Shown here one piece after another: positions 9,550-40,635 of a stretch of 64,000 nucleotides of DNA. Within the stretch, counting starts at the first letter, position 1. The number at the start of each line of letters is the position of its first letter. The notes beneath the pieces are model-generated. The model made no database searches and was not told the origin of the DNA. It saw only the letters and a program-made list of their open reading frames with translations. The DNA is from Anthoceros angustus (Eukaryota; Plantae; Anthocerotophyta), in assembly GCA_010909165.1 (NCBI GenBank), contig MU008153.1, positions 806,001 to 870,000 on the forward strand, read 5' to 3'. The position numbers and the translations under genes are program-made.

Positions 9550-11905
9550 TCTTATCTCCAGCTGCAAGTGAGTAGAACCCGATAGCATTTCCTGCTAGAA
9601 ATGTAGCCACTGGGTAGCGCGTATCGTCCATTCTGCGGTTCCTGACCCGCAGTTTCTGGCACAGCTCTCCGTCCTTGATATGCGGCGTTCTTAGCGATGC
9701 ATTGGGCGAAGCGTTTCAACTCCGACCAGCAGTTCCATGTAACTTCACACAAACCCTTGACTCCTCGAGGCGAGAGGTAAGAGGCGCTCGGACAGAGCGT
9801 ATAAGGCAGGATCCATGTGCCTCCAGGCAGAGGGGCACACATGTAGAGCCTCGCGAGTAGCAGGGAGGCGCATGCCTCGAGGCCGTGCAGCTGGATTTCC
9901 TGACACCCATAGTTGCAAACACTGTCTGGGATTGACATGCATGTGTTCACTGTGATACACACGCCGGAAGCGCGTCACTGTAGTTGCAGAACGACGTGCT
10001 CATGTCTTCCACTAGAACTTTTCATTCAACTCCGTCTCCTCCGGAGGCACGCACGTGTTAACTCATCTGGCGCGATGGGCCTTGGCAATTGCAAAACAAG
10101 CACAGAACACTGCAAAACTATGCAAACCGAGAGATGCAGATCCGCACCAGCACTTTCAACTGATATCCCAAATCTCATCCATGGTCGCTGTGTCATCGGC
10201 TGCTGAATCTACACGCGTTTCTCACAAAAATTGGATGAGACCATACCCTTTGACATGCATGCTTGCGGGCCAGGTTGCTGCACTTCAAATCCACCAGAGA
10301 TGTGGAAGGGAGGGCAAACATAACATGGCCGACCTTGTGATTAGGTTAGCATCAATATCAAAGTTGCCCAAGTTGGTAAGAACGTTCATTCTCCTGGACA
10401 AAAGCTGCAGACACGTAGCCTCGTTGCGCGCATCGTTACACTGCCTGGAGAAATTCCGTTGACGTCTTTTACCCTCTTTCGTTGTGCACTTCTTCATCCA
10501 ATCCGGGTGTTCACTTTAGCATAGCAGGGTACGATTCCACCAGTGGTGATGTTTACTGGGAACTGTGTCTGGCCCACTGTAAGTCGTCTGAAAGTCACGA
10601 AGCAATCGTGTCATGCCCTGAAATGGAACTCGTGGGGGACTCTCATTTCATCTACAGTGATTACACAGGACACTTTGTTACATCGTGTTTGTAAACATCT
10701 GCTTGTTGCAGAGTAGACCTTAGCAGTAAGGGAGCATGTTAGCCATCTCACGCACAAATTGTTGCTGGTGTGCAATCACTTCCGCATCACTTCTCGAAAG
10801 AGAACCTTCACTATTGATTCAACTGCTTCACTTAGCACTGCCAGTGCCAGCCAGCCCTTCAAATTGTTCCAATGCTGGAGGGAAATAGTCTGACAGAGTT
10901 GTTCCACATTACTAAGCCTCGCAAGAAGCAGGCTTTTCATTACCTGGAGTTTCTGAGGCACTCATTGCAGCCTCCCGGCCAGGAAGAAAGCTGCCAGCAT
11001 GGAGAGTCCATCGCACCGAACAGGTTGTGACCACACGTACATATGGCTATCCACAAGGGCAGAAGTTTACAGAGAGTTCTCTCGGCACCGTCAGCTGTCT
11101 TCGATTAGTGGGACTTTGTTCTCATACTGTTGGGATGAATTGTATCATGATGTTAGTATTACTCTTCTGTTCTGAGAGTTTGCTGATAGATCCGTCCCGT
11201 GAGACTGTTTTGTAAACTGTCGGCCTCCTCCCTCTTCTGCGTCACTTCAATTTAGAGTAAAGACAATGTGTAGGCCCCTGTAAGCTGAGCAGCAATATTT
11301 GGGTAATGCAAGCCCCTGCAAAAGTGCCAAGGGCAAAGGACAAAGTGCAAAAAGGAGTACCTAGTACAGATTTGGTATATCCAGTGCATCGTGGAAACGG
11401 TGAAGACGTGGTGCTCCGTGTTGTGAGGGGTTGAGTCATCAAACAGCCCTCACGACACAGCTCCGACAATAGATAACGCCAACCATTAGAGGACTTTGCA
11501 CACCGCCGAGTCTTACGGATAACCACTTTCCGCCGAGTCTGGTCACATTGCAGGCGCCGTCCTTCCTCCTCCCCCCATAAATCTGCGTGTGCCCATCCCC
11601 GTCAGTCAATTTTCCCTGCTTTCCTCTCCAGCTGGCGAGGTCCTTGGTTCAGCATCAGATCTGAGCTCTTGCAAGCTGTGGATTCGTGGACTGTTCGGAG
11701 GCGCACCTGATCAAGCAAACATGGCTACATTGCGTGCAACTCTGTTATGTCTCCTGATAGCTCTTTCCTCCAGTATGTGGATAGAGGGAGCTTCAGCGCT
11801 ACCTAAACGAAGCAACTGCCCGGTGTCTGGCCGGAAGGTTAGTGGAAAGTGAAGCAGCTGCTCAGGGAAGAAATGGAGATTGTCCGTCCCCTTCAGATTT
11901 CTCAT
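9550..11905 (-). pseudogene. Possible heavily decayed LRR (NLR-like) coding relic
   Basis: Broken minus-strand frames give LRR-like snippets (HSLQEL, QGKLTD, CWQLSSWPG, NVLTNLGNFDI; paralog ITELHEMWPCLFDQAPNSTQVHSLQEL and LTDLQTLIL); many stops and frameshifts. Confidence 0.3.
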
Positions 11906-12275
11906 AAGTGCGTGTCACGCAATGCAGCTCTGCACGGAAGTGTCACAGTCTGTGAAGCTCACCTGCTGCAAGCCAAATCCAGCTTCACCCTACGCCTACG
12001 CCAAGCACGGCTGCGTGGATCTGCGCTCCGATCCCGGTTTCTGCGGCTCTTGCACCAATCTCTGCAAGAACGGAGAGACCTGCGTGGCAGGAAAATGCGT
12101 TCCTGTGAAAGTCTGTAAATTTGCTTGCATCAAGGGGTACACCTGCTGCGACGGCCAGTGCGTCAATACTCAAGCCGACAACTACAACTGCGGGAAATGT
12201 GGCGTCTCTTGCGGACCCCCTGAGGGCCAAGTTGGGCTGCTCAAGTTCTGTTATAATGGAGAGTGCGTGATCTAG
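11721..12275 (+). CDS. STIG1-like secreted cysteine-rich protein, copy A (exons 11721-11837, 11928-12275; 154 aa)
   Basis: Signal peptide MATLRATLLCLLIALSSSMWIEGASA; phase-0 GT..AG intron; Stig1 pattern CVDLRSDPGFCGSCTNLC...CCDGQCVNTQADNYNCGKCGVSC...FCYNGEC. Confidence 0.9.
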
Positions 12276-13165
12276 GCTGGTGCATGATCAGCCCTGCTCT
12301 CAGCTTGTTCTTCCAGTCCACCGATCTAGGCAGTGAGGTAGCTGCCGCGAAGGTACATGTTTGTACATTGTACAGCTCTTTCATCAGCTCGATGAAGGCT
12401 TTTTGTTGCTCAAGCTTGAAAGAGTGATCGTTCTCCAAGGAAAGACTAGCAGAATCAATCCAAAAGAATTGTCCAGTACTTTGAGGTCATATCTCTGAGT
12501 TTCTTCTTCCACACGATGGCCTAAGACTCCAGTACCTTGGTGAATAGGATGGAACGAGAATCAGTCCTACCAATCTTGTGGCCTCAGACTCTTCTTGCCC
12601 GAGGAAAAACAGCAAGATAGCTGTGAGCCTTCACAACCTTCAAAGAAAGCAGACACACGTTGGCAGCATTGCACACAGAGTTTGAAGAGACGGTTTCCTT
12701 CCCTCTCCAGTAAATCTCACAACCAACTGATCAGCTTGCACCTGGAGGCTGATCTTGTCCTCACAGCAATCCGCTGTGATGCGGGACTGTCACGCTGCAC
12801 AAGAGCCAAAGATTTGAAGCGAAAACTGCAAAGCCTCACAGGCTCGACACATTGACTGCAATCCGCACAATTGCAGGCCTCGAAGAAGTTCCGTTCTGCC
12901 ACCATTGGATTGCCAACAGCATGTAGTACGCGGCTTCAAGATCAGAGGAGGAAATTGCTCCGGATCTGAGCCTTCATCTCGAATCAAGATTGTCTACAGG
13001 GCCTGCGAATTCCGAAGGGTCTCTTCACGCTTCCGTCATCCATGGACAGAGGACACGGTTCGGCCGCGCTTTGTCTTCAATCCAGCAAGCCTTGCCTTGC
13101 CCTCGGGCAGTGCGCCTCCCATGTTCATCGTTCGACAATGGACATCACTGGCAACCCAAGCCTCA

Positions 13166-13803
13166 AGGGCTGTTCACAACTCGCAGTACGGGCTTGCGGT
13201 AGCGGTAAGCGAAAAGATGTCAGTCTTTCACAAAAAATAGGGTTTCTTGACGCGCCGCTGGACCCCGCACGACTGGGCAGTACGGGACAACGAAACGTGG
13301 TTACTTGAGGGTGTTCCCGTTGGAGCCTGCCCGACCCGACCCGACCCGACCCGGATTGCCTCACACTCCGACTCCGAGCCCGCTCCATTCCACAGGGCTC
13401 GTTCATTAGTTCATGCCTTCATTCGTTCATTCCCAGTATTTGTGCGGTAATAGATCGGGTTTTCATTGTTGGACCCGGTCCCCGATTTCCCCACCTTGCT
13501 GCTTTCGAGGCTTACTCGGCAGTGCGCTTCGGGGTACCTCCGCATTGCTACTGTGGAGAGGACTGCATTTTTTTTTGTTGGTGTTGCTGATATTCAGCAT
13601 ACTATGTTGCAAACGGCCATTTCAGCATACTGTGTCGCAAACGGCCGTATGGGGTATTGCATTTTGTTTTAATGGTGCTTCCCGCATTTCGGCATACTGT
13701 GCCGCAAACGGCCGCATGGGGTACTACATTTTCTTTTAACGGTGCTTCCAGCATACTGTGCCGCAAACGGCCGTATGGGGTACTGCGCGTTGTGAACGGC
13801 CCT
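13166..13803. mobile_element. Tourist-like (PIF/Harbinger) MITE, 638 bp
   Basis: 24-bp TIRs AGGGC(T/C)GTTCACAAC(T/G)CGCAGTAC; flanks TCA / TGA; the paralogous empty site has a single TCA at 24395-24397; internal repeats GCATACTGTG(T/C)CGCAAACGGCCG(T/C)ATGGGGTA x3. Confidence 0.85.
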
Positions 13804-13912
13804 TGACCAGGTCGGTGCACTGTGAAGGAGTGAACGGACAGCCTCCATCGGAGTATTCACACAGTGGAATGCCACAAGCTGGTTAGCTGCATGACTTCTG
13901 TAATCTGAATAG

Positions 13913-14290: not shown

Positions 14291-15366
14291 GTCCCCGCGT
14301 GACGATTTTAACCCATCATGGCCAGACCAGTTTATAAATGATGTGAGTTGATTCTTTGGACGTCTTTATGAGTAAATTCTCCAAAATATACGGGTATAAG
14401 TAGGTAAAATTATTATAAAATTTTGATAAAATATTAATTATTAATATGTGAGTAATATCGATAAACCTAGGTGGGTCAATGGTTGGATGAACTAAATTAT
14501 GATGTAGTTGGCATGAACTGCCAATCTATGGCATATCGATATGGTCACGCGCCATCCACATTTTTTTTAAGAATACCGATATGGTCACGCGCCATCCATA
14601 TTTTTTTAGGGTTGTGAACAGAAAGAAATAGTCCACCCGCATACGGTAGAACTATTTCGTTATGTCACGCATGACCACATGGGTCTTGGCTGTGGCCACC
14701 CTGTGTATCGATCTCATCAAGCTAATGATGCACAAGAACTTTTGACCATAGTACACACAAACTTTTTTCTATCGCCCACTTGTGGCTAGGGTTTAGGGTT
14801 GCATCTTCTCATGGGCAGTTGTGTGCCCTTGCATCATGCATCTGCTGGGTGGCGTATGTGTGCGGTTGTGTATGGTAGGTCTTCATCGAGGAGTGACGAG
14901 AAATGACACAAAGGGACCCTAAACCCATGCCTAGGCTGAGCCCCTTATGCAGTAGGCTGCGCAAACCTTACCCCCATGTTGTAGCCACGGTCACGTGAGA
15001 ATGAAGCCTGCACGTGAGAGCGAGGCCTTCAGGCGAGAGCGAACCCTACACCCTAAACCTTTTCGCCCAAAAATTTGTGTGTGTGTGTCTTGGCCGTGTG
15101 TTAACATGTATGTATGGTGATCGGAACCCTGAAAACCTAAAGAACAAAACATCTGCATGACACAATGGGAGCACCAAGCAAAAAGTGTGTCATACAAAGT
15201 TTTTGCCCCACGTACGAACGTACCGAAGCCATATTATATGTGTATTGTATAGGAGAATCTTAAAGATGTCGTGGCATATTTCCGTAGAGTACACCCAAAA
15301 GAACAAAGTCACACACACGATGGCGCGTGACCAGCACGGTATTCCATACCAATCCAATAGTGTTCT

Positions 15367-15673
15367 TAGTGTTAATTTCCTAAAAAATAGTTGAACTTGT
15401 AGCATTAAAGTTTTTTTTTGCTATGAAATATAAACATGCATATACATGCTAGAATGTCACCGAAATATAATCAAATCACTAAAAGATAATTAATTAGAAT
15501 ATCACCATAATGTATTAATTGAATGACAACCAACACAAAGAAAAGATTCCCTATAAACAAGATATTAATGACATATTTTGTGTCCAAGGATTAAAACCTC
15601 CATGATAATCATAATGTTTAAAATTATTCATAAAATTAATATATATTTTTTCAACATAAAAAATAGGTTTCTC
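15367..15673 (-). pseudogene. Decayed fragment of the tweety/prominin-like gene at 29822-31408
   Basis: Aligns to 30906-31290 (TTAGTGTTAATTTCCT..AATAGTTGA.CTTGTAGCAT; GTGTCC.AAGGATTAAAACCTCCAT..TAATGTTTAAAATTATTCATAAAAT); translates FMNNFKHYDYHGGFNPW versus FMNNFKHYYGGFNPW. Confidence 0.85.
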
Positions 15674-15779
15674 ATAAGAGTGAATAGATCGCAATGTACT
15701 CAATTGCCAAGTCATACTTCATATTTGTTCAATGCTGCACAACCAATTATCATGAAAACATTTATAACGATGATGAGAA

Positions 15780-16670
15780 ACCTTCTCATGGCAGCCCTAA
15801 TGGACTCCAAAGCCTGGTTTGTGGTTTTTGCAGATCTGCCCTCGCTCCCCACCGTGGAAGCACAAAACTTCTTAAGACTACGGAGCTGAGAAAACGATTC
15901 CAATACCCTAGACCTGCCTTGCACACTAAAATGACAGGTTCTATGCAAGAAAATGGACCCCAAGTCCCACGCAATCGCCTGGCAACATGCCTCGGATGGC
16001 CCCCTCACTCCAGAAGTGGCGGTCAGTTCTCTTGTTGCGCCCTACATCGTCTCGACCGCTCACTGCTTGACGATCGTGCTCTTGGAACTAAGGCTTCCGC
16101 TGCTGGCACTACAGGTTCTACGGGTGGGGCATCAACATCATGCGCATCCCCAAGCTGAGCCCCTTGAAAGCCAGAACTCCCCATATCTTGTGCAGCCCCT
16201 TCACTCCCCATGTCTTGTGCAGCCCCTTCACTCCCCATGTCTTGTGCAGCCCCTTCACTCCCCATGTCTTGTGCAGCCCCTTCAGTAGTTTCTGCACCCA
16301 CCACTAGAGGTGGCACCAGAACACTTTCAATTACAGCCACTGCCAATCTTTTTTCAGTGCTAACCTGCCTCTTTGCTCGCCAAGCACGTTTCCAAGCAGC
16401 ATGCTTGGAGGGTCGGACAACATCCGCCTCGCTCCCGTTGCTTGGCGCCATGTCTCAACACACTCTGAACCCTTCAACCTTCGCAATCCGTGGCCTCGTC
16501 TATCACAAAAAAGTTTGACACCTGGGGCCAAGGGCGATTGAGTACTCTCAACTTCCTGTCAATGTGAATTATAAATTTCAAACTAGGAATCTTCCTCCCG
16601 GGATGAGCCATTCGAGCACTTCCTACGAAAACGAGGTCTAAAATTGAAACCAAAAGTCTCTCTCCCACGG
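15780..16670 (-). mobile_element. Degraded gag/ORF1-like retroelement remnant containing a 27-bp x4 repeat (16176-16284)
   Basis: Low-complexity ORF with EGAAQDMGS x4, then a degenerate zinc-knuckle-like LCFHGGERGQICKNH; the repeat is certain, the retroelement origin is inferred. Confidence 0.35.
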
Positions 16671-21324: not shown

Positions 21325-21430
21325 CTTTAAAAAATAGAATCCACGTATAGGTACTTGGAGTTTTCGCAGTTTCGCGAATGAGTGCATCAGCGAAAATCAA
21401 AAGAGAGCTTGCTACAGCCAAAATCCACTA
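21325..21430 (-). repeat. Fragment of the 5' leader of the tweety-like gene
   Basis: AGTTTTCGCAGTTTCGCGAATGAGTGCATCAGCGAAAATCAAAAGAGAGCTTGCTACAGCCAAAATCC matches 31437-31510 AGTTTTTGCAAGTTTGCGAATTAGTGCATCTGCAAAAATCAAGAGAAAGATCTTGTTACAGCCTAAATCC. Confidence 0.75.
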
Positions 21431-21448
21431 AGTGGAAACATGATTAAA

Positions 21449-24400
21449 ATTTTTCATCCAACTTCATCTCTTCGAGAAGCACGCACGTGTTATCTCATCT
21501 GGCGCGAAGAGCCTTGGCAATTACAAAACAAGCACAGAATACTCCAAATCTATGCAAACCGCGAGAGGCAGCAGGTTGCAGAACTGCACCAGCACTTTCA
21601 ACTGATATCCCCAACTCTCATCCCTGGTCGCTGTGTCATCGGCTGCTGAATCTACAACTCTTCCTCCCCAAAATTGGGCCACCTGCTTTGACATGCATGT
21701 TTGCGGGCCAGGTTGCTGCACTTCACATCCGAAAACTCTGGCTCCTCACAGAGTTCCAGCATCCCTGCTCCAAATCCACCAGTCTGTGAGAATGGAAGGG
21801 AGGGCAGACATAACAGAGTCAACCTTGTGAATAGGTTAGGATCAATATCAAAGTTTGCAAATCGGTAAGAACGTTCATTCTCCTGGAGAAAAGCTGCATA
21901 TTCGTAGCCTCGTTGCGCGCAATAGGCAATAAGCCTCGCAAGAGGCAGGCGTTTCATTATCTAGAGTTTTTGAGACACTTGTTGCAACTTCCCGGCCAGG
22001 AAGAAAGCTGCCAGCATGGAGAGTCCATCGTACCGGACAGGATGTGACCACTCGCACACATGGCTATTCACAAGGGCAGAGGTTTACAGAGAGTTCTCTC
22101 GCCACCGTCAGCTGTCTTCGATTTGTGGGTCTTTGCTTTCATACAGTTGGGATGAATTGTATGATGTTATTATCACTCTCTGAGATCTGGATGGCAGATG
22201 AATCCAGAGAAGATTTGTCCCGTGAGACTGTTTTGTAAACTGTGGGGCTCCTCCTCTTCTGCATCACTTCAATTTAGAGTAAAGATGTGTAAAGCACTGC
22301 AAGCTGAGCAGCAATTAGTAATGCAAGCCTCTATCAATTCGACCAACCTGCAGAAGTGCAAAGGGCAAAGTGCAAAGTGCTAAAGGGAGTACATATTTGG
22401 TAAGTCCATAGCATCGTGGAAACTTTGAAGTGGTACTACGTGTTGTGAGGAGTTGACTCAAACAGCCAGTTCCACAATAGGGTGACGCCAACCATTTGAG
22501 GACTTCAGACACCGCCGAGTCTTGCGCATGGATAACCACACCGAGTCTGTTCCCAGTACAGGCGGCGTCCTTCCTCCTCCTCCATAAATCTGGGGTTGCC
22601 CATGCTGTAAGTCAGTTTTCCCTGCTCCTCTCCAGTTGGCGAGGTCCTTGCTTCAGCATCAGATCACAGCTCTTGCAGGCTGTGGACTTGTGTACTGTTT
22701 GGAGCCTGATCAAACAAACATGGCCACATTTCGTGCAACTCTGTTATGTCTCCTCCTGATGGCTCTTTCTTACAGTATGTGGATGGAGGGAGCTTCAGCG
22801 CTACCTAAACGAAGCAACTGCCCGGTGTCTGGCCGGAAGGTGAGTGGAAGTCAAGCTGCTCAGGGGAGAAATGAAGATCTGTCCGTCTCTGTGAGATTCT
22901 CACAAGTGCATGTCACGCAATGCAGCTCTGCGCGGAAGTGTCACAGTCTGTGAAGCTCACCTGCTGCAAGCCAAATCCAGCCTCACCTTACAACTACCCC
23001 AGGCACGGCTGCGTGGATCTGCGCTCCAATCCCGGCTTCTGCGGCTCTTGCACCAATATCTGCAAGAAAAGAGAGACCTGCGTGGCAGGAAAATGCGTTC
23101 CTGTGAAAGTCTGCAAGATTGCTTGCATCAAGGGGTACACCTGCTGCAACGGCCAGTGCGTCGATACTCAAACCGACAACCACAACTGCGGGAAATGTGG
23201 CGTCTCTTGCGGACCCCCCAAGGGCCAAGTCGGGCTGCTCAAGTTCTGTCGTAATGGAGAGTGCGTGATCTAGGCTGGTGCGTGATCAGCCCTGCTCTCA
23301 GCTTGTTCTTCCAGTCCACCGATCTAGGCACTGAGGTAGCTGCGGCATTTTGCTACATGTGTATACACTGTACAGCTCCTTCATCAGCCCGATGAAGGCC
23401 TTTTGTCGTTTAAGCTTGAAAGTGTGATCGTTAAGTGTCGCAAATAATTCTGAAGAATCGATCCAGTACTTTGAGGTAATCTCTCTGAGTGTCTTCTTCC
23501 ACGCGATGACCCAAGACTCCAGTATCTTGGTGAACACGATGGAGCGAGAAGGATGTCTGCAGTCCTACCAATCTTGTGGCCTCGGACTCTTCTTGCCCGA
23601 GAAAAAGGAGCAAGATAGTTGTAAGCCTTCACAACCTCCAAAGAAAGCAGACACTCGTTGGCAGGATTGCACACACAGTTTGAAGTGACGGTTTCCTTCT
23701 TTTTCCAATAAATCTCACAACCCGCTGATCAGCTTGCACCAGGAGGCTGATCTTGTCTTCCACAGCAATCCGCTGTGATGCGGGACTGTCACGCTGCACA
23801 AGAACCAAATTTGAAGTGAAAACTGCAGAGCCTCACTGGCGCGACACCGTGACTGCAATCCGCACAATTGCAGGCCTCAACGAAGTTCCGTTCTGACACC
23901 ATTGGAGTGCCAACACCAAGTACGCGGCTTCAAGAACAGAGGAGGAAATTCCTTCGGATCTGACATCTTCATCTCGAATCAAGATTTTCTACAGGGCCTG
24001 CAAATTCCGCATGCACATCTTTTCTTCACCTCCAGTTCCGAATTCGGGCACAGTCGCATTCCGGGCACAGGAAGAGGATGCAGGATGAACGGACTGTCCC
24101 GTAGGCTAAGGTAGCGGACAGCTCTGCCGCAATGGACGTCGTCCGTTACAATGTGGAAGTACTCGCCACTGGCCAGCGCACGAGGCGGTGCCTCCTCCGC
24201 GGTCGGGACGATCTGGGAGCCTGGCTGGTCAAGCGCAGCTCCGCCGTTCAGTCCAGACGAGGTAGTTGCAGTGTGAACAGTGCGCATAGCACGCTGGTCT
24301 ACGCGCCTCGCGTGCTTTGCATTTCGTGTGCGGATCTCTTCACGCTTCCGTCATCCATGGTCATCAGTGGTCATTATCAATGGCAACCCCAGTCTCACCC

Positions 24401-24450
24401 TGTCGGTGCACTGCCAAGGAGTGGATGGACAGGCTCCATTGGAGTGTTCG
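21449..24450 (+). repeat. Segmental duplication copy B (paralog of 10018-13858)
   Basis: See copy A; contains STIG1 copy B and the MITE-free empty site. Confidence 0.9.
22720..23273 (+). CDS. STIG1-like secreted cysteine-rich protein, copy B (exons 22720-22839, 22926-23273; 155 aa)
   Basis: Signal peptide MATFRATLLCLLLMALSYSMWMEGASA; GTGAGT..TGCAG intron; same cysteine skeleton as copy A. Confidence 0.9.
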
Positions 24451-27600: not shown

Positions 27601-27993
27601 AAAGTCCATTGGTGGGTTACTAAATGCACTGACGCATTTGAAGGCAGGTACCTAGAGGAGATGATTTTACCTGATCAGCCACCAACTCGCGCCAATCATG
27701 GGGGTTGCTCTCAACGTCGGAACTTGAGGTTGCGGAAACACGTCGACAAATTGCTTCTTTCAGACACATTCATTTTGGCATACGGGTTTTCTTTAACAAA
27801 ACAGAAGCAACTAAATGCAAAGACCAGAACCATAATACGGAAAAACATGTACGTTTTGCGCTTTGTGCAGGAGGAAGCTCCGGAACATATGGAAGGAAGT
27901 GACGCTGCATATGATGGCGTTGCAGAAACTGTCGCATCAGAAGGCGAAGATCTTGAAACCCTTGATGAAAATGGTTCACGCGGTACAGATTAG
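24631..27993 (+). mobile_element. Sola-like (GHTH-D motif) DDD transposase pseudogene, tandemly duplicated (24631-26270 and 26271-~27937)
   Basis: Motifs ISIDRMDQQKTQLP, LYLQLDYCTGE(NKN)ALLFAYLNMLVELKVF and VGFLLVGHTHDQVDQMFSRF; 5' end missing; stops and frameshifts are shared by both copies; 1640-bp offset. Confidence 0.75.
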
Positions 27994-28809
27994 TTAGTTT
28001 TTCAGTTGACCAAGGACTCCAACTAGTAGTGGACTGTGGGCAAGGTGTGCGCCGGCTGACCGGCGCACTTCTCCATCAGTGGATAGGTTATGCGTTCCGC
28101 CATGGACCCAAATGGCATAACCAAGTTCACATCCTGAGCACACAAAATGACGATATAGGACAGAAATTGCGATTATGTTAGAGTACAGCCTTGTTTTTGC
28201 AAATGGCATGAATGGATTTCCCAACAGCGAAAAAAACGCGATATGTAATGACAAGTCAGAGCCAATCGAAGTAAAAAACACCGTATCAGCCAAAACCGTA
28301 TCTCTATCCAGATGGACGTTATTTTTTTTATTAGAACACATGATAAGAACGGCTTGTCCGACGCAAGTTCAAACGCATCCACCAGTTCCGGTCCCCGCAC
28401 ATTTTCTGAAGATTTGAAGGAATGAATTCAAAGACGATAATATATTTTGCCACGTTCTACTGCGGTGCTGTCAAATAGTGGATGCCACATTTGTTCAAAA
28501 CCCGCAATAACGTACATGGTTTTCTGGGACACGCTTTTTTTTGGATATGATGATGGGAAAGTCTGCTGCCTTTTTCCCAGCAGCCCATTTCAACGGAATC
28601 CGCCAATATTGCTCAGACATTGTTGTAAGTTTTTTAAACTACTTAGGCTTAGGTAAATAAACATAATTTTACGGATCATATTTATTTTAGGTATTATGAT
28701 TTCAAGGTTATGAGGATTAATGGTTTTAGAAGGGGAGAGGACAATAAAACCTTCGATTGACAATGTATTAATGAAGCAATGCATGAGCGGTAAACATGGC
28801 TTGCATTGG

Positions 28810-29275
28810 TAATTTGCCTTTGTGATGTGGGTGTTATTCGTGATTTGCCTTTGTGATGTGTGTGGTACATATGATTTCCCTATATGATGCTTGCGCTGCT
28901 CATGATTTTCTTTTATGATATGTATGCCACTCGCAATTTTCCTTTGTGATGTGTGTATCATTCGTGATTTCCCTTTGAGATGTGTATGTCATTCGTGATT
29001 TCCCTTTGAGATGTGTGTGTCATTCGTGATTTCCCTTTGAGATGTGTGTATCATTTGTGATTTCCCTTTGTAATGTGTGTGTCATTCGTGATTTTTTGCG
29101 ATGCTTGGTTTACTCGTGATGCTTGTTTGATTTCCCTTTGAGATGTGTATGTCATTCGTGATTTCCTTTTGAGATATGTGTATCCTTCATGATTTCCCTC
29201 TGTAATGTGTATATCATTCGTGATTTTTTCGGTGCTTGGTTTATTCGTGATGCTTGTTTGATTTCCCTTTGAAAA
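28810..29275. repeat. ~29-31-bp tandem array (left arm)
   Basis: CATTCGTGATTTCCCTTTGAGATGTGT(A/G)TGT units. Confidence 0.9.
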
Positions 29276-29664
29276 CGTCATTGTATTTACTGAAGAACAA
29301 ATAAAAGTTTTACAAAGTGTTGATCGCTCTTAAGGGATTCTTAACCTTAAAATGACAACTCCTATCTTTCAAGTACGACGACACTAGCGTAGCCAGTGGA
29401 AAAGTATTGAGTGTCATGGCACCATGATTCTATCCTTATTAACCCTCTTCTACCTTCGCCAAACATTAAATAACGGGCTAGAGAGCGGTTTTAATTCTTA
29501 TTGTACCCATTACAGACATGAAAAGATGGGAATTATTTGTAATTATCATGATTTCCTATTATTATACATGGTACATACAACTAACAATATATAGGCAACT
29601 TCTTAAAACCTATGTGTCATGCCATTACTCTAGTGAAAAGAAATGAAACCATTCTCCACACTAG

Positions 29665-29724
29665 CCGGTTATATGGCCGGTTATATGGCCGGTTATATGG
29701 CCGGTTATATGGCCGGTTATATGG
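29665..29724. repeat. Perfect 12-bp repeat (CCGGTTATATGG)x5
   Basis: Directly visible ~100 bp downstream of the stop codon of the minus-strand cargo gene. Confidence 0.95.
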
Positions 29725-29821
29725 CTGGAAGCTAATCTAGAAAGTAACCCTTAACTCAGGAATTACAATGAATAACAATTTGTAAACGGCACACAAATAC
29801 AACATAGCATGAAAGTTTCTC

Positions 29822-31408
29822 TTATGCACATAAACATTTATAATATTGACACATATCAGGGGGAATTTGAACTTTCCAATTTTTAGATCTTCTATCTATA
29901 TCAAATTGTCCTGTCCATGGATCAACTTGAGCTCCAGGAATAGGAGGCGGTTCAGCTCTTATTCCTTGAGGTCCTGGAATCTTTGGTTCTGGAGGCAACG
30001 GTAATTGCTTTTCTATTTGAGACATTGTAGCTGTAGGTATTGGTCGTTGTGGTTCTTTCATTGTCCTAGCCACTCCCATCAATACAATACTTGGAATCAT
30101 TAAAATTGTTGCTACTATGAGACTGATCCACATGACCATACCTGCTCGATGTATTGGTTGATGTACAGACTCTTTAGTGATAATCACATCATTCAATGAT
30201 TCAAGAAAATAAGAACAGTTTCCAAGCTTTTGAAGATCATGACGAGTAACTTCCAAATTCTCAGTAACATTAAAGATCATCCAAGTTAATTGTACATACT
30301 TTGTACTATTTGCCGGCTCGATAACACCTTGATTCACAAAATTGACAAAGTTATCATATTCATGTATTGCATTGTTGCTACTTGTATTAAGCTTAGCGCA
30401 AGGTGTAAACCCTCTCCAATCAAACTCTGTATTAAAAGGAGCAGCGTAGACTTGAGCAGCATGCAACGCATCACTTGCAGCTTTGGATGCCACAAAACAA
30501 AAACCAGCTGAAAGTGACATACCTATAACCAAAACAAAACCTATGTATACGAGATACTTAAATATTGGTGCTTGGAGGAACGTCCACTTTGGTCTATACA
30601 GCCGAGCAATAATCATTGTCAATGCTATCACCACTAGAATAAGTGAGGGAACAAAAAATGCAATACTTATTGCATATTCATATCGCATAAGAGACATTCG
30701 CATCAAATGAAGTGATTTTCTTTCCCAAGGATAATCGATACTAGATATTGCCAACTTTGCATTAGATACAAATTGCACCATTTTTCTAGCGTTGCTCTTA
30801 GAGTTCGGATCATAAAAAGTATAATCATCATCGGTTAGGTTCTGTATACCATAGTTCAATTGATTCAATATGTTGTCTATACTTTCTTTAGTAGCTTCAT
30901 ATGGTTTAGTGTTAATTTCCTGAAGAATAGTTGAGCTTGTAGCATGAAATATATGTTGCGCTATGAGAAATATGCACATGGATATAATTCCCAGAATGCA
31001 AGACACAATCATTAGAGATCCTATTCTTGTCAAAACCATTGTCCAATCCTCTAAATCCTCTCGTGAAGAAAATATATGATTGAAGAAGGCAACTAACACC
31101 CCAAATATAATCAACAGTATTCCAGCCCACGCAAAGAAAGGATATCCTGTAAACAAGACACTATTAATATATGCTGTGTCCCAAGGATTAAAACCTCCAT
31201 AATAATGTTTAAAATTATTCATAAAATCAATACGATTTTTTCCAACTTGTAGGGGTCTTGGATTTATTCTGCTATAAGAAATAGGTTCCTCAGATTGATT
31301 AAGTCGCACTGTACTTAATTGCGGTCCCTCTTCATACTTATTCAATGTTGTACAACCAATAAACGTTGAGAAACTTATAATGATAATGAAAAAATAAATT
31401 CGAGACAT
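29822..31408 (-). CDS. Intronless 528-aa multi-pass membrane protein, plant tweety/prominin-like family (At2g12400/At1g71110-type)
   Basis: Likely ATG at 31408 (MSRIYFFIIIISFSTFIG signal peptide); RIDFMNNFKHYYGGFNPWDTAYINSVLFTGYPFF matches the recalled family motif RxDPLxxFxxYxGGWNIxxxHYWASVxFTGxPxF; about 5 hydrophobic segments, two large loops with N-glycosylation sequons, Pro-rich tail. Confidence 0.8.
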   Translation of the reverse strand: MSRIYFFIIIISFSTFIGCTTLNKYEEGPQLSTVRLNQSEEPISYSRINPRPLQVGKNRIDFMNNFKHYYGGFNPWDTAYINSVLFTGYPFFAWAGILLIIFGVLVAFFNHIFSSREDLEDWTMVLTRIGSLMIVSCILGIISMCIFLIAQHIFHATSSTILQEINTKPYEATKESIDNILNQLNYGIQNLTDDDYTFYDPNSKSNARKMVQFVSNAKLAISSIDYPWERKSLHLMRMSLMRYEYAISIAFFVPSLILVVIALTMIIARLYRPKWTFLQAPIFKYLVYIGFVLVIGMSLSAGFCFVASKAASDALHAAQVYAAPFNTEFDWRGFTPCAKLNTSSNNAIHEYDNFVNFVNQGVIEPANSTKYVQLTWMIFNVTENLEVTRHDLQKLGNCSYFLESLNDVIITKESVHQPIHRAGMVMWISLIVATILMIPSIVLMGVARTMKEPQRPIPTATMSQIEKQLPLPPEPKIPGPQGIRAEPPPIPGAQVDPWTGQFDIDRRSKNWKVQIPPDMCQYYKCLCA

Positions 31409-31654
31409 TATTGAAAAGTAAATTCTACATAAACTAGAAGTTTTTGCAAGTTTGCGAATTAGTGCATCTGCAAAAATCAAGAGAAAGATCTTGTTACAGC
31501 CTAAATCCTCTGGAGATACAAAGTTGCACGAAGACTTGTAAAAGGAGGGCTGCTCATAAATATAGGGAAAAAAAAAGAAGAAGAAGCAAAATTAGAAATA
31601 TTTTTAAATATTAAGTTATTATTATTTTGGTTGTGATCACAATGGACTAATTGA

Positions 31655-32175
31655 TAGCAGAGGAAGAGGCACGCACACCACAAAGGGAATTTGTGAGAGG
31701 CTCGCACAGCACAAAGGGAAATTGTGAGTGGCTCGCACATCACAAAGGGAAATCATGAGAGGCCCGCACACCACAAATGAAAATTTCAAGTGGCACGCAC
31801 ACCTTAAGGAGGATTCGAAGGTGGCACACACACTATAAATGGAAATTGCATATGGTACGCACATCACAAAAAGAAATTATCAACGGAAAACACTAGAAAA
31901 GAAAGGGAAATTGCCAGTGGAAAACACTAGAAAGGAAAGGGAAATTGCCAATGCAAAACACTAGAAAGGAAAGGGACATTGCCGGTGGAAAATACTGGAA
32001 AGGAAAGGAAAATTGGCAATGCAAAACATTAGAAAGGAAAGGGAAATTGCCAATAGAAAATACTAGAAAGGAAAGGAAAATTGCCAGTGGAAAATACTAG
32101 AAAGGAAAGCACGAGTGGCCCACATGCTAGAAAGGGAAAGCACAAGTGGCCCACACGTCACAAAGGGAGATCACT
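31655..32175. repeat. Right-arm arrays: ~30-bp CACAAAGGGAAAT units, then ~34-bp GGAAAA(C/T)ACTAGAAAGGAAAGGGAAATTGCCA units
   Basis: Directly visible; the first array is the inverted counterpart of 28810-29275. Confidence 0.9.
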
Positions 32176-32242
32176 GCTGGCACACATATTCACCCCTCAT
32201 ATATTACTTGGTTGGTATAATGTTAAACGAAGGTTGTGATAA

Positions 32243-32497
32243 TATCCTCCCGAGGATAATATCTCAAGGTCAAGTGGCTTTCTTTCGTGGGGATGAATTG
32301 GTGGTGTTTGGCCCTCGTTCATGCAATTTTATTCATACTCTTGATTGATTGAAGATTATTTGTCTTATATAAATTTTACCTTTACATTAGTCCAAACTAT
32401 TTTACCACAATCTATGTAGTTATCATATTTCAGTCCGATGACGGAAATCCGTCCTCAGTGGACTTAAATAAAATTCTTCTTCTTCTTCTTCTTCTTC
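32243..32497 (+). mobile_element. Short LINE-derived insertion in the right arm
   Basis: 5' part translates NILPRIISQGQVAFFRG (L1 RT-like LPxIISxxQxAFVxG); 3' end has hairpin GACGG-AAAT-CCGTC, then AATAAA and (TTC)8; it is absent from the left arm. Confidence 0.55.
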
Positions 32498-33649
32498 TCC
32501 CCTTCTAAACCCATCACACCTTTTGACCTTAAAATCATAATATCTCAAATAATTCTAATTTATACAGCAAATTATATCTACTTATCATACTGATACAGTT
32601 TACAAAAATAACCCAAAGCATCGAGAAGTCCAAAGCATCGACTCACGTGATCCGTAAAATGGTCGGGCCTCCCCTAAACCAGCTATCGAGTTTGGGAGCT
32701 TGGTTACGAGCCCGGACTCGGTCCCACCACGGGACTGAGACAACCAGTGGAAAAGGCAACACGGCAGCTGGATGGACTGCGTACCGCTTTACGTGCACTT
32801 GTGCACCGGGTGCGCGGCACGCGGTTAGTAGATGCGGGGTTAGAAGTAGAAGTGGGGATTAGAAGCGGTTTGCCATGCCACTCTCTCGTGAGAAACATGC
32901 CAGTCTGCGAGCATCCGAACCTCCTGTCAAAGCGACCTCCTCCTTAACGGCCCCATGAACTGCCCTTGCTCGCACTGTTCGCTGACGGCTGCAGCCGAAA
33001 CGCCCCTTTTGCTTCCAGCAGGCCTGCCCAAGGGGACCTCTTGGGACTTCATATGCTGATTGGCGAGACCACAACCTCGAGCTCTTGTATGTCTCATGTT
33101 ATCCCACGACCTCGTGAGAGGCCAGAAGAACTGCCGTCAATGGGTCCTGGTGACCACCTCACTGAACACCCGTCTCCAGCTCCAGCTAGACACCCTCTTG
33201 GGCACTTGGTGTTGTCCTTGCATCGAGGTGGTCGGAAGCACTGGCTAGAAACCACTGCTTTGTTGGGTCTGCGAGGACTGTTTCAGGATGGGTCATGTTG
33301 CCCTTGGCTTGACTCATAGACTGCGCGCCCTGAGCCTATGGGTGCAACAGACTGTGATGCATCATCGGTTAGCGCCTGGAGCAACAGACATGAATGACAG
33401 TGGCATCCCATAATAAGGTTACCAGCCTCCTGCAGTTTACTACCATTTGCTGCCGTCCTTGCAAATCCACACTTACATCCTGCAGACGATAATGTGGTGT
33501 TCTACTTTCTGTATGAAGGCCGTGGCAGTTATACGATGATTCGATCAGCGCAACCTGCAGAGTATTCACAATCTTCCTGGACAATACTTTCTAAGGCACC
33601 TGAGATAGCCAGCTGGTTGCTCTGCACACACGTGTTTTTCTGGTTACTC

Positions 33650-36600
33650 CTAGGAGGTTTCCCCAACCACAAAACTATGCACCAGTCCCTCCATGTCTGT
33701 CCACCAGCTCTGGCCGGGCTGCTTCCATGCCCTGGTTCTCAACCTCGTTGCCTGCATTTCCTCTGCCCGCTGCCACATCTGGGCACCCGTGTATATGTTG
33801 GACATCAAACTATAGGCTGCGGCGTTTTTCTTGTCTAGCTTCACTGCTTCCTTGAAAGCCTGGAGTCCCACCTCCGCATTGTTCCACTTTCGACAAGCAC
33901 CCAATAGTGTGTGCCAAACTGCAGCATCAGGCTGTACAGGCATCGCCCTTATCAAACCTAGGGCTTCATCCAGTTGTCCAGCACGACCCAGAAGATCCAC
34001 CATGCATGTGTAGTGGTCCACCGTGGGAATGATGCCATTTTGTTTGCTCATAGCCTCAAAGCACTCTTGCGCCTTGCTCACCTGACCCGTATGACTGCAA
34101 ACTGTTAGTATACTGAGGAGTGTGACGCCATCCGGCCGTATGCCATCCTCTCTCATTCTAAGAACCAACTCGAAGACCTGTTTACTGTCTCCTTGCTGGG
34201 TGTATCCCGCAATCAGCGCATTCCAGGCACTAATGTCTCTTTTGGACAATTCCTCAAACACCTCCAATGCATCACCCATGCTACCGCACTTCCCATACAT
34301 GTTTATCAAACTGCCAGGTACAAGCTCGTCATCTTGCAACCCTTGTTGTTTAATCTGCGCATGGATCTGCCTTCCCAAAGGCAAAGCTGCCACATTCGCA
34401 CATGCCTGTAAGAGGCCCACAAATGTAACAGAATCAGGTGCAACAACGCCTTCCTGCTGCATAGACCTGTAGACACGGAGAGCTTCCTGCCCCATCCCCT
34501 GTTGGGAATATCCTGCAATCATGGCACTCCACATCACCACATCTTTCTGAGGAAGTCCATCAAACACTTCCTGCGCATCCTCCAGGCTGCCGCACTTTGC
34601 ATACATGTTTACCAAACTGCTGGCTACAAACACATCAGCCTCAAGTCCCTGGTCTCTTATTTCTGCATGAAGCTGCCTCCCCTTCTCCAGACCAGGAGTT
34701 CCCACACTTGCACACGCCTGCAGTAGGCATGCAAATGTCACAGAATTGGGTGTAACCACGCCTTCCTGCTGCATAGCCCCTGAAGAGCTTCCTGCCCCTG
34801 GCCCTGCTGAGAGTACCCTGCTATCATGGCACTCCACGTCACCACATCTTTCTGAGGAAGTCCATCAAACACACCTTGAGCCTTGTCTAAGCTGCCACAC
34901 TTTGCATACATGTTCACCAAGCTGTTGCCCACAAACACATCCGCCTCAAGCCCTTGCTCCTTGATCAGCGCATGAAGCTGCCTGCCCTTCTCCAAAGCCG
35001 AGGCACCCACACTCGCACATGCCTGCAGCAGGCTCACAAACGTCACAGAATCCAGTGCAACCTTGCATTCTTCTTGCATGGCCGTGTAAAGACAAAGGGC
35101 TTTCTGCCCCATGCCCTGCTGGGCATATCCTGCTATCATGGTGTTCCACATCACCACATTCTTTCGACTAAGTCCATCAAACACTCCGAGCATCCACCAG
35201 GCTCCCACACTTCGCATACATGTTCACCAGGCTCCCCTCACAACCACATCACCCTGAAGCCCCTGTTCTCTCATCTCCCCATGGAGCTCCTTCCCTTCTC
35301 CAAACCTGCAACCCCATACTCGCACATGCCTGCAGGAGGCACACAAACGTCACCGAGCTGGGTGCAACAACGCCTTCCTGCTGCATAGACCTGTAGACAC
35401 GGAGAGCTTCCTGCCCCATCCCCTGTTGGGAATATCCTGCAATCATGGCACTCCACATCACCACATCTTTCTGAGGAAGTCCATCAAACACTTCCTGCGC
35501 ATCCTCCAGGCTGCCGCACTTTGCATACATGTTTACCAAACTGCTGGCTACAAACACATCAGCCTCAAGTCCCTGGTCTCTTATTTCTGCATGAAGCTGC
35601 CTCCCCTTCTCCAGACCAGGAGTTCCCACACTTGCACACGCCTGCAGTAGGCATGCAAATGTCACAGAATTGGGTGTAACCACGCCTTCCCGCTGCATAG
35701 CCCCGTAGGCACGAAGAGCTTCCTGCCCCCGGCCCTGCTGAGAGTACCCTGCTATCATGGCACTCCACGTCACCACATCTTTCTGAGGAAGTCCATCAAA
35801 CACACCTTGAGCCTTGTCTAAGCTGCCACACTTTGCATACATGTTCACCAAGCTGTTGCCCACAAACACATCCGCCTCAAGCCCTTGCTCCTTGATCAGC
35901 GCATGAAGCTGCCTGCCCTTCTCCAAAGCCGAGGCACCCACACTCGCACATGCCTGCAGCAGGCTCACAAACGTCACAGAATCCAGTGCAACCTTGCATT
36001 CTTCTTGCATGGCCGTGTAAAGACAAAGGGCTTTCTGCCCCATGCCCTGCTGGGCATATCCTGCTATCATGGTGTTCCACATCACCACATTCTTTCGACT
36101 AAGTCCATCAAACACTCTCCGAGCATCCACCAGGCTCCCACACTTCGCATACATGTTCACCAGGCTCCCCCTCACAACCACATCACCCTGAAGCCCCCGT
36201 TCTCTCATCTCCCCATGGAGCTCCTTCCCCTTCTCCAAACCCGCAACCCCCATACTCGCACATGCCTGCAGGAGGCACACAAACGTCACCGAGCTGGGTG
36301 CAACAACGCCCTCTTCCCTCATAGCCTTGTAGACACCAAGAGCTTCTCGCCCCATGCCCTGCTGAGAATACCCTGCTATCATGGCATTCCACGTCACAAC
36401 ATTCTTCCTCTCCAGCCCATCAAACACTCTCTGAGCATCCTCCAAGCTCCCACATTTGGCATACATGTCCACCAGGCCACTGAAAACAAACAAATCAGGC
36501 TCAACTCCACTGGCCAAAACATCAGCATGCACCTCCTGCCCAGACCTCAAGTCTGCTCCCTTCGCACAGGCCTGAAGAGCTGCTACAAACACATGCCCGT

Positions 36601-37186
36601 TTGGCTTCACGCTCGACCTGCGCATCCCATGGTAGAGCTCCACGGCCTGCTTATCCTGCCCATGTTTCACATGAGCAGAAATTATGGCAGCCCATGTGAA
36701 GGCATCCGGCTTGGCAGCCATGGTGAACACACCCATGGCTTCCTGCAACCTGCCATGAAAAGCATACATCCGCAGAATGCGGTTGCACAAGAACGTATCC
36801 GACTCAAACCCTTTCTTCACGGTGAGAGCATGAACACGGCGACCTAGAGCCAGATCATGTCTGTCCACGCATTCCTTCATTGCAGCATAAATCACAGATT
36901 TTGAGACATGGCAGCCTGTGCCCACCAGAACTTCCAGGGCCTCCACGGCCTCACCGAGCTGCCCCTGGTCACATAGCTTCGTCACGGCATCCGCCGTTAC
37001 ACCGGGGTTGTGGAAACCGTCCATGGAAGATGGATATCCAGCTCCAGCCAGACATTCTATGGAGCGGGCAGGCATTCTAACAAAATCGGTGCACCACGCG
37101 GCTTTGCTGTTCGCGAGGCCCGGGTTGGTTGGAGTCAGGTGAGCAGAAACTCGCCCCCACGACGGGTCCTGGTGGCCAGCAGTCAT
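33650..37186 (-). CDS. PLS-class PPR RNA-editing factor with E1/E2 and a 'WW' PG-box; frameshifted in this assembly
   Basis: Repeated P-L-S triplets (DVVTWSAMIAGYSQQG / NSVTFACLLQAC / DVFVASSLVNMYAKCG), S2 HYTCMVDLLGRAG, E1 VWHTLLGAC, E2 AYSLMSNIY, then KQPGQSWWTDMEGLVHSFVVG and stop; split over ORFs 35249-37201, 34738-35217 and 33650-34837. Confidence 0.92.
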
Positions 37187-40344: not shown

Positions 40345-40635
40345 TATGAAAATGGCTTAGGCCAAATGGACGAACATTTAAAAACGAACCTCGTGATTAA
40401 GCATCCTGAGCATAGATCGGTACTTAGATGGGGTGCCTAAAGGGAGTGGATGCCCTTGGTGCAAGTAGCTTATGCACACCATGGTACAAGTTCTTAAGTA
40501 CCAAGTCCCATGCTCTTGGTGCAAGTAGCTTAGGCACACCATGGTACAAGTTGTTGTTAAGTACCAAGTCCCATGACGGAAATCCATCCTTAGTGGACTA
40601 AAATAAAAATAAAATTCTTCTTCTTCTTCTTCTTG
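40345..40635 (+). mobile_element. Non-LTR-like 3' end repeat (hairpin, AATAAA, TTC tail) with an internal ~60-bp duplication
   Basis: ATGACGGAAATCCATCCTTAGTGGACT..AATAAAATTCTTCTTC matches 32436-32497; upstream part matches 43010-43140. Confidence 0.55.

What the first reader, a model, noticed from the sequence alone, without database searches (positions are those of the whole stretch)
28666..32660. Foldback-type element carrying an intact intronless tweety/prominin-like membrane gene
A 528-aa open, signal-peptide-bearing multi-pass protein is the only gene between ~0.6-1 kb inverted arms built of unique sequence plus inverted ~30-bp arrays. It is AT-rich and intronless, whereas every host gene here except the PPR is intron-rich and all are GC-rich; I recall the Arabidopsis family members as multi-intron. 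The arms are ~20-27% diverged and one took a LINE hit, yet the ORF has no stop, suggesting selection. Two more decayed pieces occur in this window. Together this suggests a mobile family that captured (via an RNA or foreign intermediate) and spread a channel- or membrane-shaping gene, or a domesticated copy of one. I know of no described equivalent.
Basis: partly seen in the sequence, partly recalled or inferred. Interest (0 to 1): 0.8.

Follow-up and report, generated by a model that had tools for sequence, protein, structure and literature searches.

The report
Intronless divergent Tweety gene between inverted repeats
A hornwort-like plant genome holds an intact, intron-free, very divergent copy of the Tweety membrane-protein gene in an AT-rich block bounded by decayed inverted repeat arrays; it looks like an old RNA-derived gene copy kept open by selection, and nothing shows that it moves as a transposon.

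Summary
A 528-aa ORF (29822-31408, minus strand; GC 35%, GC3 26%) is the only gene in a ~4 kb AT-rich block. The block is bounded by inverted arms of unique sequence plus 31/34-bp arrays.

The protein is a Tweety (TTYH) family member:
- It has a signal peptide and 5 TM helices.
- Its only sequence relatives among 1.84 billion representatives are plant 'tweety homolog' proteins (20-32% identity).
- Its model matches TTYH1-3 structures first (Foldseek E 1e-5; VIA Z 19).

Canonical plant genes have about 10 exons and this copy has one, so an RNA-mediated origin is supported. An open frame is not expected under neutral drift (P about 1e-3), although a codon-position test shows no clear purifying selection.

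The 'mobile family' reading is not supported:
- The two extra pieces (15365-15780; 21353-21429) are gene and leader fragments without arms.
- They lie collinear with a duplicated STIG1-like block, which points to local segmental duplication.
- I found no TSD, no transposase and no arm copies elsewhere in the window.

Unchecked notes from this scan list other AT-rich islands with intact intronless divergent genes of other families elsewhere in this genome. None of them lists this Tweety gene.

The parts
28625..28741 (.). Left arm, outer unique segment; inverted match of 32493-32612
   Evidence: 70% identity over 121 nt, E 9e-15; GC drops here
28804..29272 (+). Left arm, 31-bp tandem array (about 13 units, with a 132-bp higher-order repeat at 91%)
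   Evidence: TRF and repeat finder; 11 core motifs, all on +
29273..29821 (-). Unique 3' flank of the ORF (putative 3' UTR), holding a perfect (GCCGGTTATATG)x5 at 29664-29725; no poly(A) remnant seen
29822..31408 (-). Intact intronless ORF, 528 aa: divergent Tweety-family protein (signal peptide, 5 TM, helical extracellular bundle, Pro-rich tail)
31409..31664 (-). 5' flank and leader; 31433-31511 is conserved (80%) in the fragment at 21353-21429
31665..32190 (-). Right arm arrays: 31-bp units 31665-31880, 34-bp variant 31873-32109, 31-bp units 32097-32190; inverted relative to the left array
   Evidence: 7 core motifs, all on -
32191..32492 (+). Extra segment in the right arm with no partner in the left arm; its 3' part (32432-32498) is a hairpin plus (TTC)8 tail shared with 40567-40634 and 43136-43227: probable truncated non-LTR retroelement insertion
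   Evidence: inference from the tail structure
32493..32612 (.). Right arm, outer unique segment; GC steps from 0.32 to 0.54 just beyond it
15365..15780 (-). Pseudogene fragment of the same AT-rich Tweety subfamily (aa 6-168), with at least 5 stops, a frameshift and deletions
21353..21429 (-). Isolated copy of the ORF's 5' leader (80% over 79 nt, E 1e-12), directly before the start of duplicated block B
10013..13858 (+). Block A of a segmental duplication (STIG1-like gene 11880-12275), collinear with block B and followed by the Tweety pseudogene
21445..24449 (+). Block B of the segmental duplication (STIG1-like gene 22920-23273), 75-94% identical to block A, followed by the island

Best explanation
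The ORF is an old processed (RNA-derived, intron-free) paralogue of the streptophyte Tweety-homolog gene family. Selection has kept its frame open while its sequence drifted far from the canonical genes, to 20-23% identity, and towards AT-rich codons.

It most likely still makes a plasma-membrane Tweety-type protein. The predicted layout is N-terminus outside, five TM helices, a four-helix extracellular bundle formed by extensions of TM2-TM5, and a cytoplasmic Pro-rich tail. About 60 aa of the Cys-rich cap of extracellular loop 2 and one conserved cysteine pair have been removed. By analogy with TTYH and prominin, it would act in lipid handling or membrane shaping; a pore function looks less likely. 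This function is inferred, not shown.

The gene sits in a 4 kb AT-rich block bounded by degenerate inverted arms made of 31/34-bp arrays. That block is foldback-like in anatomy. The only other traces of the gene in the window arose when a larger host block (STIG1-like gene plus Tweety gene) was duplicated locally, after which one copy decayed.

Shown here: the ORF, its family and fold, the intron loss, the inverted arrays, the collinear duplication. Inferred: retroposition as the mechanism, selection, function, and that the arms are a relic (of a foldback element or an inverted duplication) and not an active vehicle.
For: Family and fold:
- An exhaustive phmmer search gave only 10 hits, of which the eight traced to source are streptophyte proteins (two named tweety homolog, the rest unnamed), best E 1e-6.
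- The invariant pre-TM1 signature is retained, and 20 of 30 family-invariant positions are kept against 23% agreement elsewhere (p 1.6e-6).
- The family profile's best PDB hit is TTYH2 at E 9e-5.
- Foldseek ranks 1-11 are all TTYH1-3.
- VIA gives Z 19.0 and 17.7 for TTYH3 and TTYH1, against 14.3 or less for generic helical bundles.

Intron loss: Marchantia has 10 exons over 6.0 kb and Diphasiastrum about 10 exons over 4.3 kb, with matching boundaries. The window ORF is one exon from signal peptide to tail.

Selection: the twin copy is riddled with stops. Simulated neutral drift of 8-10% per lineage leaves the frame open in only 0.05-0.15% of trials.

Local duplication: there is a collinear chain of matches with the STIG1-like block.

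Arms. GC steps at the arm ends.

Retroelement tails nearby show that reverse-transcriptase activity existed in this genome.
Against: - No poly(A) remnant or target-site duplication flanks the ORF, so retroposition is inferred from intron loss alone.
- The codon-position test against the pseudogene shows no third-position excess (20/22/16%, p 0.36), so purifying selection on the amino-acid sequence is unproven.
- The structure model is only moderate (pLDDT 57, pTM 0.46) and was built from an 11-sequence alignment.
- No expression evidence could be obtained.
- The ORF falls below every Pfam threshold.
- The sharp GC boundaries at the arm ends would also fit insertion of a discrete element.
- The parent gene in this genome was not seen. 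Only a canonical transcript from another hornwort, Nothoceros, was found.
Confidence: 0.6

Rival explanations
1. The 4 kb block is a non-autonomous foldback / Pack-type DNA transposon that captured a Tweety cDNA and has moved, or still moves, as a unit.
For: - Long inverted arms built of tandem subrepeats with unique outer ends, which is the anatomy of foldback elements.
- GC content steps exactly at the arm ends, as for an inserted unit.
- A single complete gene lies between the arms.
- A transposase-like DUF7869 fragment lies 0.7 kb away.
- Unchecked scan notes mention other foldback structures and gene-bearing AT-rich islands in this genome.
Against: - No target-site duplication at the arm ends.
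- No arm or core-motif copy anywhere else in 64 kb.
- The two other gene pieces lack arms and are collinear with a host-gene duplication.
- The arms are only 58-72% identical, so any mobility is ancient.
- Pack-type capture normally takes genomic fragments with introns, not a complete processed ORF.
- The DUF7869 segment is GC-normal and absent from copy A.
Confidence: 0.17
2. The AT-rich block is foreign DNA (an endogenised giant-virus or other horizontally acquired segment) carrying its own Tweety-like gene.
For: - Composition is sharply unlike the host genes (GC3 26% against 41-63%).
- The gene is intronless.
- No close relative among about 15 billion public proteins.
- CpG depletion is no stronger than in the rest of the window, so the AT-richness is not simple methylation decay.
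- The language-model look-alikes are oomycete and red-algal clusters.
Against: - The traceable significant sequence relatives are all streptophyte proteins, and the ORF carries the plant-family signature FK.Y.GG[YF][ND].
- Nothing in IMG/VR with either the protein or the family alignment, nothing in JGI metagenomes, nothing in PHROGs.
- The block is only 4 kb, holds one gene and no viral hallmark.
- Other intergenic patches of the window are similarly AT-rich.
Confidence: 0.06
3. The inverted arrays are unrelated to the gene's origin. A lineage-specific gene simply lies inside a locally rearranged minisatellite region (an inverted duplication), and the AT-richness reflects a regional mutation or recombination regime shared by many such islands in this genome.
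For: - Minisatellites of other unit types flank the decayed copy A (13915-14283, 16176-16284).
- The window is rich in local tandem and segmental duplications.
- The arms are mosaics of subrepeats whose motifs spill beyond the aligned ends.
- Scan notes list many AT-rich islands with intact intronless genes of unrelated families (unchecked).
Against: Matched unique segments outside both arrays require a true inverted duplication, not a split array. This reading does not by itself explain the loss of all introns.
Confidence: 0.15

Closest known systems
Streptophyte 'protein tweety homolog' family (e.g. Marchantia polymorpha Mp3g05490 / PTQ47971; four Arabidopsis homologues reported by Matthews et al. 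2007, as cited in PMC8273234)
   Same: Same overall layout, collinear from signal peptide to TM5. The invariant pre-TM1 motif (R..D....F..Y.GG..) and the LPC and NCS cysteines are retained. These are its only significant sequence relatives.
   Different: - Only 20-23% identical to every member, on a 2.8 substitutions/site branch.
- No introns, against about 9.
- GC3 of 26%.
- Lacks about 60 aa of the Cys-rich part of extracellular loop 2 and the conserved cysteines at ORF positions 315 and 416.
- Has an extra loop-1 insert and a roughly 80-aa Pro-rich tail ending in CLCA.
Animal TTYH1-3 (PDB 7p5j, 7p54, 7rtt, 7p5c, 9qnr)
   Same: Five-TM topology with long helices from TM2-TM5 forming an extracellular bundle. 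They are the best structural matches (Foldseek E 1e-5 to 5e-4 over about 400 columns; VIA Z 19.0 and 17.7) and the best profile-sequence match.
   Different: 10-15% identity. Pfam PF04906 is not reached. Function in plants is unstudied. Dimerisation and lipid binding were not tested here.
Processed retrogenes (RNA-mediated gene duplicates)
   Same: A complete coding region without any of the parental introns, located away from an intron-bearing family, surviving as an open frame.
   Different: No poly(A) tract or flanking target-site duplication is left. The parent gene in this genome was not identified. The copy is unusually old and divergent.
Foldback (FB-type) transposons and Pack-MULE-like cargo carriers
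   Same: Long inverted arms composed of short tandem subrepeats with unique outer ends, enclosing non-transposase cargo.
   Different: No target-site duplication, no other copies in the window, arms 58-72% identical, and the cargo is a complete processed gene and not genomic fragments. The other gene pieces are explained by segmental duplication.

Membership tests
Tweety (TTYH) family | Five transmembrane helices, N-terminus outside and C-terminus inside, two large extracellular loops (TM2-3, TM4-5) | tested here: met
   Hydropathy segments at about 88-113, 126-152, 246-270, 283-308 and 424-448 after a signal peptide. Five of the six sequons lie in the two large loops (N37 is in the also-extracellular N-terminal segment). 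Basic residues lie in the short loops and after TM5. This is prediction only.
Tweety (TTYH) family | Extracellular helical bundle formed by extensions of TM2-TM5; structural match to solved TTYH | tested here: met
   The model has helices 122-192, 227-270, 279-322 and 399-450. Foldseek ranks 1-11 are TTYH1-3. VIA gives Z 19.0 (343 aligned) and 17.7, against 14.3 or less for unrelated bundles. Model confidence is moderate (pLDDT 57).
Tweety (TTYH) family | Significant sequence match to the family model (Pfam PF04906 at gathering score) | tested here: not met
   The ORF has no PF04906 hit. Its plant relatives reach at most 30.0 bits against a cut-off of 31.8. However, the plant-family profile that includes the ORF hits TTYH2 at E 9.4e-5.
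Tweety (TTYH) family | Conserved extracellular cysteines (disulfides) of the plant subfamily | tested here: inconclusive
   C337 and C398 are kept. The cysteines aligned to ORF positions 315 and 416, and the whole Cys-rich insert (about 60 aa), are missing.
Prominin | Match to PF05478 or to prominin structures; about 800 aa with very large loops | tested here: not met
   No Pfam match for the ORF. No prominin among the top structural matches. Only the five-TM topology is shared.
Foldback / Pack-type DNA transposon | Long terminal inverted repeats made of tandem subrepeats | tested here: met
Foldback / Pack-type DNA transposon | Target-site duplication directly outside the termini | tested here: inconclusive
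   The flanks 'gacattgtt' and 'ccaaagcat' at the ends of the aligned arms do not match. At about 30% arm divergence, a TSD could have decayed and the true ends are uncertain.
Foldback / Pack-type DNA transposon | Multiple dispersed copies sharing the arms | tested here: not met
   There is no arm or core-motif match outside the island in 64 kb. The other gene pieces lack arms and are collinear with a host duplication. The whole genome was not searchable with these tools.
Processed retrogene | Lacks the introns of the parental family | tested here: met
   0 introns, against about 9 at conserved positions in Marchantia and Diphasiastrum.
Processed retrogene | Poly(A) remnant and flanking direct repeats | tested here: not met
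   No A/T tract within 550 bp downstream of the stop, and no flanking direct repeat found. Decay of these marks is expected at this age.
Processed retrogene | Intron-bearing parent gene elsewhere in the same genome | not testable with these tools
   Only the window is available. A canonical transcript exists in another hornwort, Nothoceros (P0013).

The most novel reading that the evidence does not exclude
This island is one instance of a genome-wide class in this hornwort-like genome. The class would be short, sharply AT-rich blocks that each hold one intact, intronless, extremely divergent copy of a conserved gene family. Tweety is found here; LOB, Haspin, PLATZ, triple-RING, MAPK and TPST are listed in other, unchecked scan notes.

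A common mechanism would produce and maintain them. One possibility is cDNA capture by a foldback-type vehicle. Another is a retrogene 'nursery' in a chromatin compartment with its own mutation and recombination regime and stage-specific (for example gamete) expression.
Probability: 0.2. Interest if true: 0.75.

Novelty: new variant of a known kind. Interest (0 to 1): 0.4.

Why it matters
Plant Tweety homologues are known to exist but have no studied function. This is a naturally 'minimised' version: an intact five-TM core and helical bundle without the cysteine-rich cap. It shows which parts of the fold are dispensable and gives an easily cloned, intron-free gene for experiments.

For genome biology, it is a clean example of a complete loss of introns in an ancient paralogue that stayed open in AT-rich, repeat-bounded DNA. 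If the similar islands noted elsewhere in this genome share a cause, they would point to an unrecognised route of gene birth in hornworts.

It also matters as a correction. The apparent 'family of copies' in this window comes from a local block duplication, not from transposition.

Tried and rejected
- Pfam on the ORF gave only sub-threshold noise. PHROGs gave nothing.
- Word-indexed protein searches with the ORF, the hornwort homologue and the alignment were all uninformative, probably because they were swamped by hydrophobic words.
- The single-sequence AlphaFold model was too poor to use (pLDDT 45).
- The ESM Atlas structure library was unavailable.
- Exact-sequence look-ups of the ORF and of both neighbouring PPR ORFs found nothing on record. 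A presence/absence test across accessions was therefore impossible, and the ORF's absence from public proteins says little about this species.
- Scans of viral contigs (protein and alignment) and of metagenome contigs gave no relatives.
- The family tree gave no supported placement: the ORF sits on a 2.8 substitutions/site branch with deviant composition.
- The TSD search at the arm ends found none.
- CpG-decay explanation of the AT-richness: rejected, because observed/expected is 0.60 in the island against 0.67 in the window.
- The idea that the 5.5 kb between the pseudogene and the leader fragment is a simple insertion: no terminal repeats were found, so it is left open.
- The codon-position selection test gave no signal.
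- The left arm shows no self-folding (z = +1.0).
- No Rfam family or tRNA lies in or near the island.
- Sequence look-ups in the scan's notes were blank.
Exon mapping used public proteins against their own loci only.
Full report
**1. What is there**

The minus strand carries an ORF at 29822-31408, 528 aa from the first ATG. It has 35% GC and GC3 of 26%. Every other ORF of 120 aa or more in the window has GC3 of 0.41-0.63. At this composition, a random 528-codon open frame has probability 7e-18.

Hydropathy gives an N-terminal signal peptide, five TM segments and two large loops that hold five of the six N-glycosylation sequons (the sixth lies before TM1). Basic residues lie in the short loops and after TM5. 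A Pro-rich tail of about 80 aa ends in CLCA.

**2. The arms**

The ORF lies in a 4 kb AT-rich block. The outer unique segments 28625-28741 and 32493-32612 are inverted matches (70% over 121 nt, E 9e-15).

Inside them are a 31-bp array at 28804-29272 and, facing it, arrays at 31665-31880 (31 bp), 31873-32109 (34-bp variant) and 32097-32190.

The shared core ATTTCCCTTTG occurs 18 times in the window against 1.8 expected. All 18 are in the island: 11 on the plus strand in the left arm and 7 on the minus strand in the right arm.

GC content steps at the arm ends.

The right arm has about 300 extra bases. They end in a hairpin plus (TTC)8 motif that recurs at 40.6 and 43.1-43.2 kb. This is probably the tail of a non-LTR retroelement.

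No TSD is visible. Short motifs (TTTTACGGATCA; CGATGCTTTGG pairs) spill beyond the aligned right end, so the true termini are uncertain.

**3. What the protein is**

Pfam gives nothing significant. The word-indexed search found nothing.

The exhaustive phmmer search of 1.84 billion representatives returned only ten hits (best E 1e-6, 22-32% identity). The eight traced to source are streptophyte proteins: Marchantia (named 'Protein tweety homolog'), Riccia, Diphasiastrum, Spirogloea, the hornwort Nothoceros, Rhododendron, Nepenthes and one unnamed transcript. Several of them have sub-threshold Pfam Tweety matches.

The alignment is collinear from signal peptide to TM5. It shows an invariant pre-TM1 signature (R59, D61, F66, Y69, G71, G72, Y80, S83, F86). 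The ORF keeps 20 of the 30 positions that are invariant in eight canonical proteins, against 23% agreement elsewhere (p 1.6e-6).

The ORF lacks about 60 aa of the Cys-rich part of extracellular loop 2 and the two conserved cysteines aligned to its positions 315 and 416. It keeps C337 and C398.

A profile of this alignment hits human TTYH2 first among all PDB sequences (E 9.4e-5).

The alignment-based AlphaFold model is moderate (pLDDT 57, pTM 0.46), but its structural matches are consistent:
- Foldseek ranks 1-11 are all TTYH1-3 (E 1e-5 to 3e-2 over about 350-400 columns).
- VIA-align gives TTYH3 Z 19.0 and TTYH1 Z 17.7, against 14.3 or less for generic helical bundles.

I therefore file the protein as a very divergent Tweety-family member. 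Kinship with prominin beyond the shared topology is not supported. Plant Tweety homologues are already on record (PMC8273234).

**4. Origin**

The Marchantia gene has 10 exons over 6.0 kb. The Diphasiastrum gene has about 10 exons over 4.3 kb, with corresponding boundaries. The window ORF has none of these introns. Loss of all of them at once is best explained by an RNA intermediate. No poly(A) or flanking repeat survives, so this step is inferred.

A foreign origin is not supported:
- All sequence relatives that could be traced are plant proteins.
- Viral, metagenome and PHROG searches were blank.
- CpG depletion in the island (0.60) is like the window average (0.67). The AT-richness is therefore not simple methylation decay, and other intergenic patches are also AT-rich.

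**5. The 'other copies'**

One extra piece is a pseudogene of aa 6-168 at 15365-15780, with stops, a frameshift and deletions. The other is a 79-nt copy of the 5' leader at 21353-21429. Neither has any arm sequence nearby.

A self-comparison shows a collinear, same-strand chain:
- A 10013-10432, 10913-13014, 13017-13048 and 13811-13858 map to B 21445-21921, 21930-24009, 24332-24363 and 24402-24449. Identity is 75-94%, and each block carries a STIG1-like gene.
- A 15366-15780 then maps to B 30906-31393.
- Block B additionally holds a DUF7869 transposase-like segment that is itself tandemly duplicated (24631-27948).

The extra pieces are therefore relics of a local segmental duplication of a host block that already contained the Tweety gene. 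They are not products of transposition.

**6. Selection**

The twin decayed while this copy stayed open. With 15-20% divergence between the duplicated blocks, substitution-only neutral drift of 8-10% per lineage keeps the frame open in only 0.05-0.15% of simulations.

Against strong constraint, differences from the pseudogene are spread 20/22/16% over codon positions 1/2/3 (p 0.36). The protein may be fast evolving while being kept open.

**7. Verdict**

The Tweety call, the intron loss and the likely selection are supported. The mobile-family reading is not supported in this window, and it cannot be excluded genome-wide.

Unchecked notes of this scan list other AT-rich islands with intact intronless divergent genes of other families in the same genome. 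That recurrence is the most interesting lead, and I did not test it.

Noticed in passing
window 24631-27948: A 1.65 kb segment is tandemly duplicated at 95% identity (24631-26279 / 26271-27948). It carries a DUF7869 transposase-like fragment (26643-26996, E 1e-24). It is present in duplicated block B but absent from block A.
   Followed up: partly
window 11880-12275 and 22920-23273: Two intact STIG1-like (PF04885) cysteine-rich ORFs lie in 2.1 kb blocks that are 85% identical: a local gene pair.
   Followed up: partly
window 29664-29725: A perfect (GCCGGTTATATG)x5 minisatellite, GC-rich, sits inside the AT-rich 3' flank of the Tweety ORF. At 100% identity it looks young.
   Followed up: no
window 32432-32498, 40567-40634, 43136-43227: A short hairpin motif (GACGGAAATCCGTC-like) followed by (TTC)n recurs at three places. 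These are probably 3' ends of a non-LTR retroelement family.
   Followed up: partly
window 29822-29836 (C-terminus of the ORF): The protein ends in ...KCLCA, a CaaX-like box on the predicted cytoplasmic tail. Prenylation is possible but untested.
   Followed up: no
window 59386-62734: Another tandem duplication: 59386-61050 / 61050-62734 at 94% identity.
   Followed up: no
window 33650-37186: PPR genes with an E motif. A 312-bp periodic array (34390-36504, 6.8 copies at 76%) reflects internally duplicated PPR blocks. Neither PPR ORF is on record in the public gene collection.
   Followed up: partly
window 13915-14283 and 16176-16284: Minisatellites of unrelated unit types (18 bp x 19.6 copies; 27 bp x 4 copies) flank the decayed Tweety copy, in roughly the positions where the arrays flank the intact copy.
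   Followed up: no
window 14320-14365 vs 32624-32669: A marginal inverted match (78% over 46 nt, E about 3e-4) links DNA beside the decayed copy to DNA just outside the right arm of the intact copy. It may be a remnant of an arm in copy A.
   Followed up: partly
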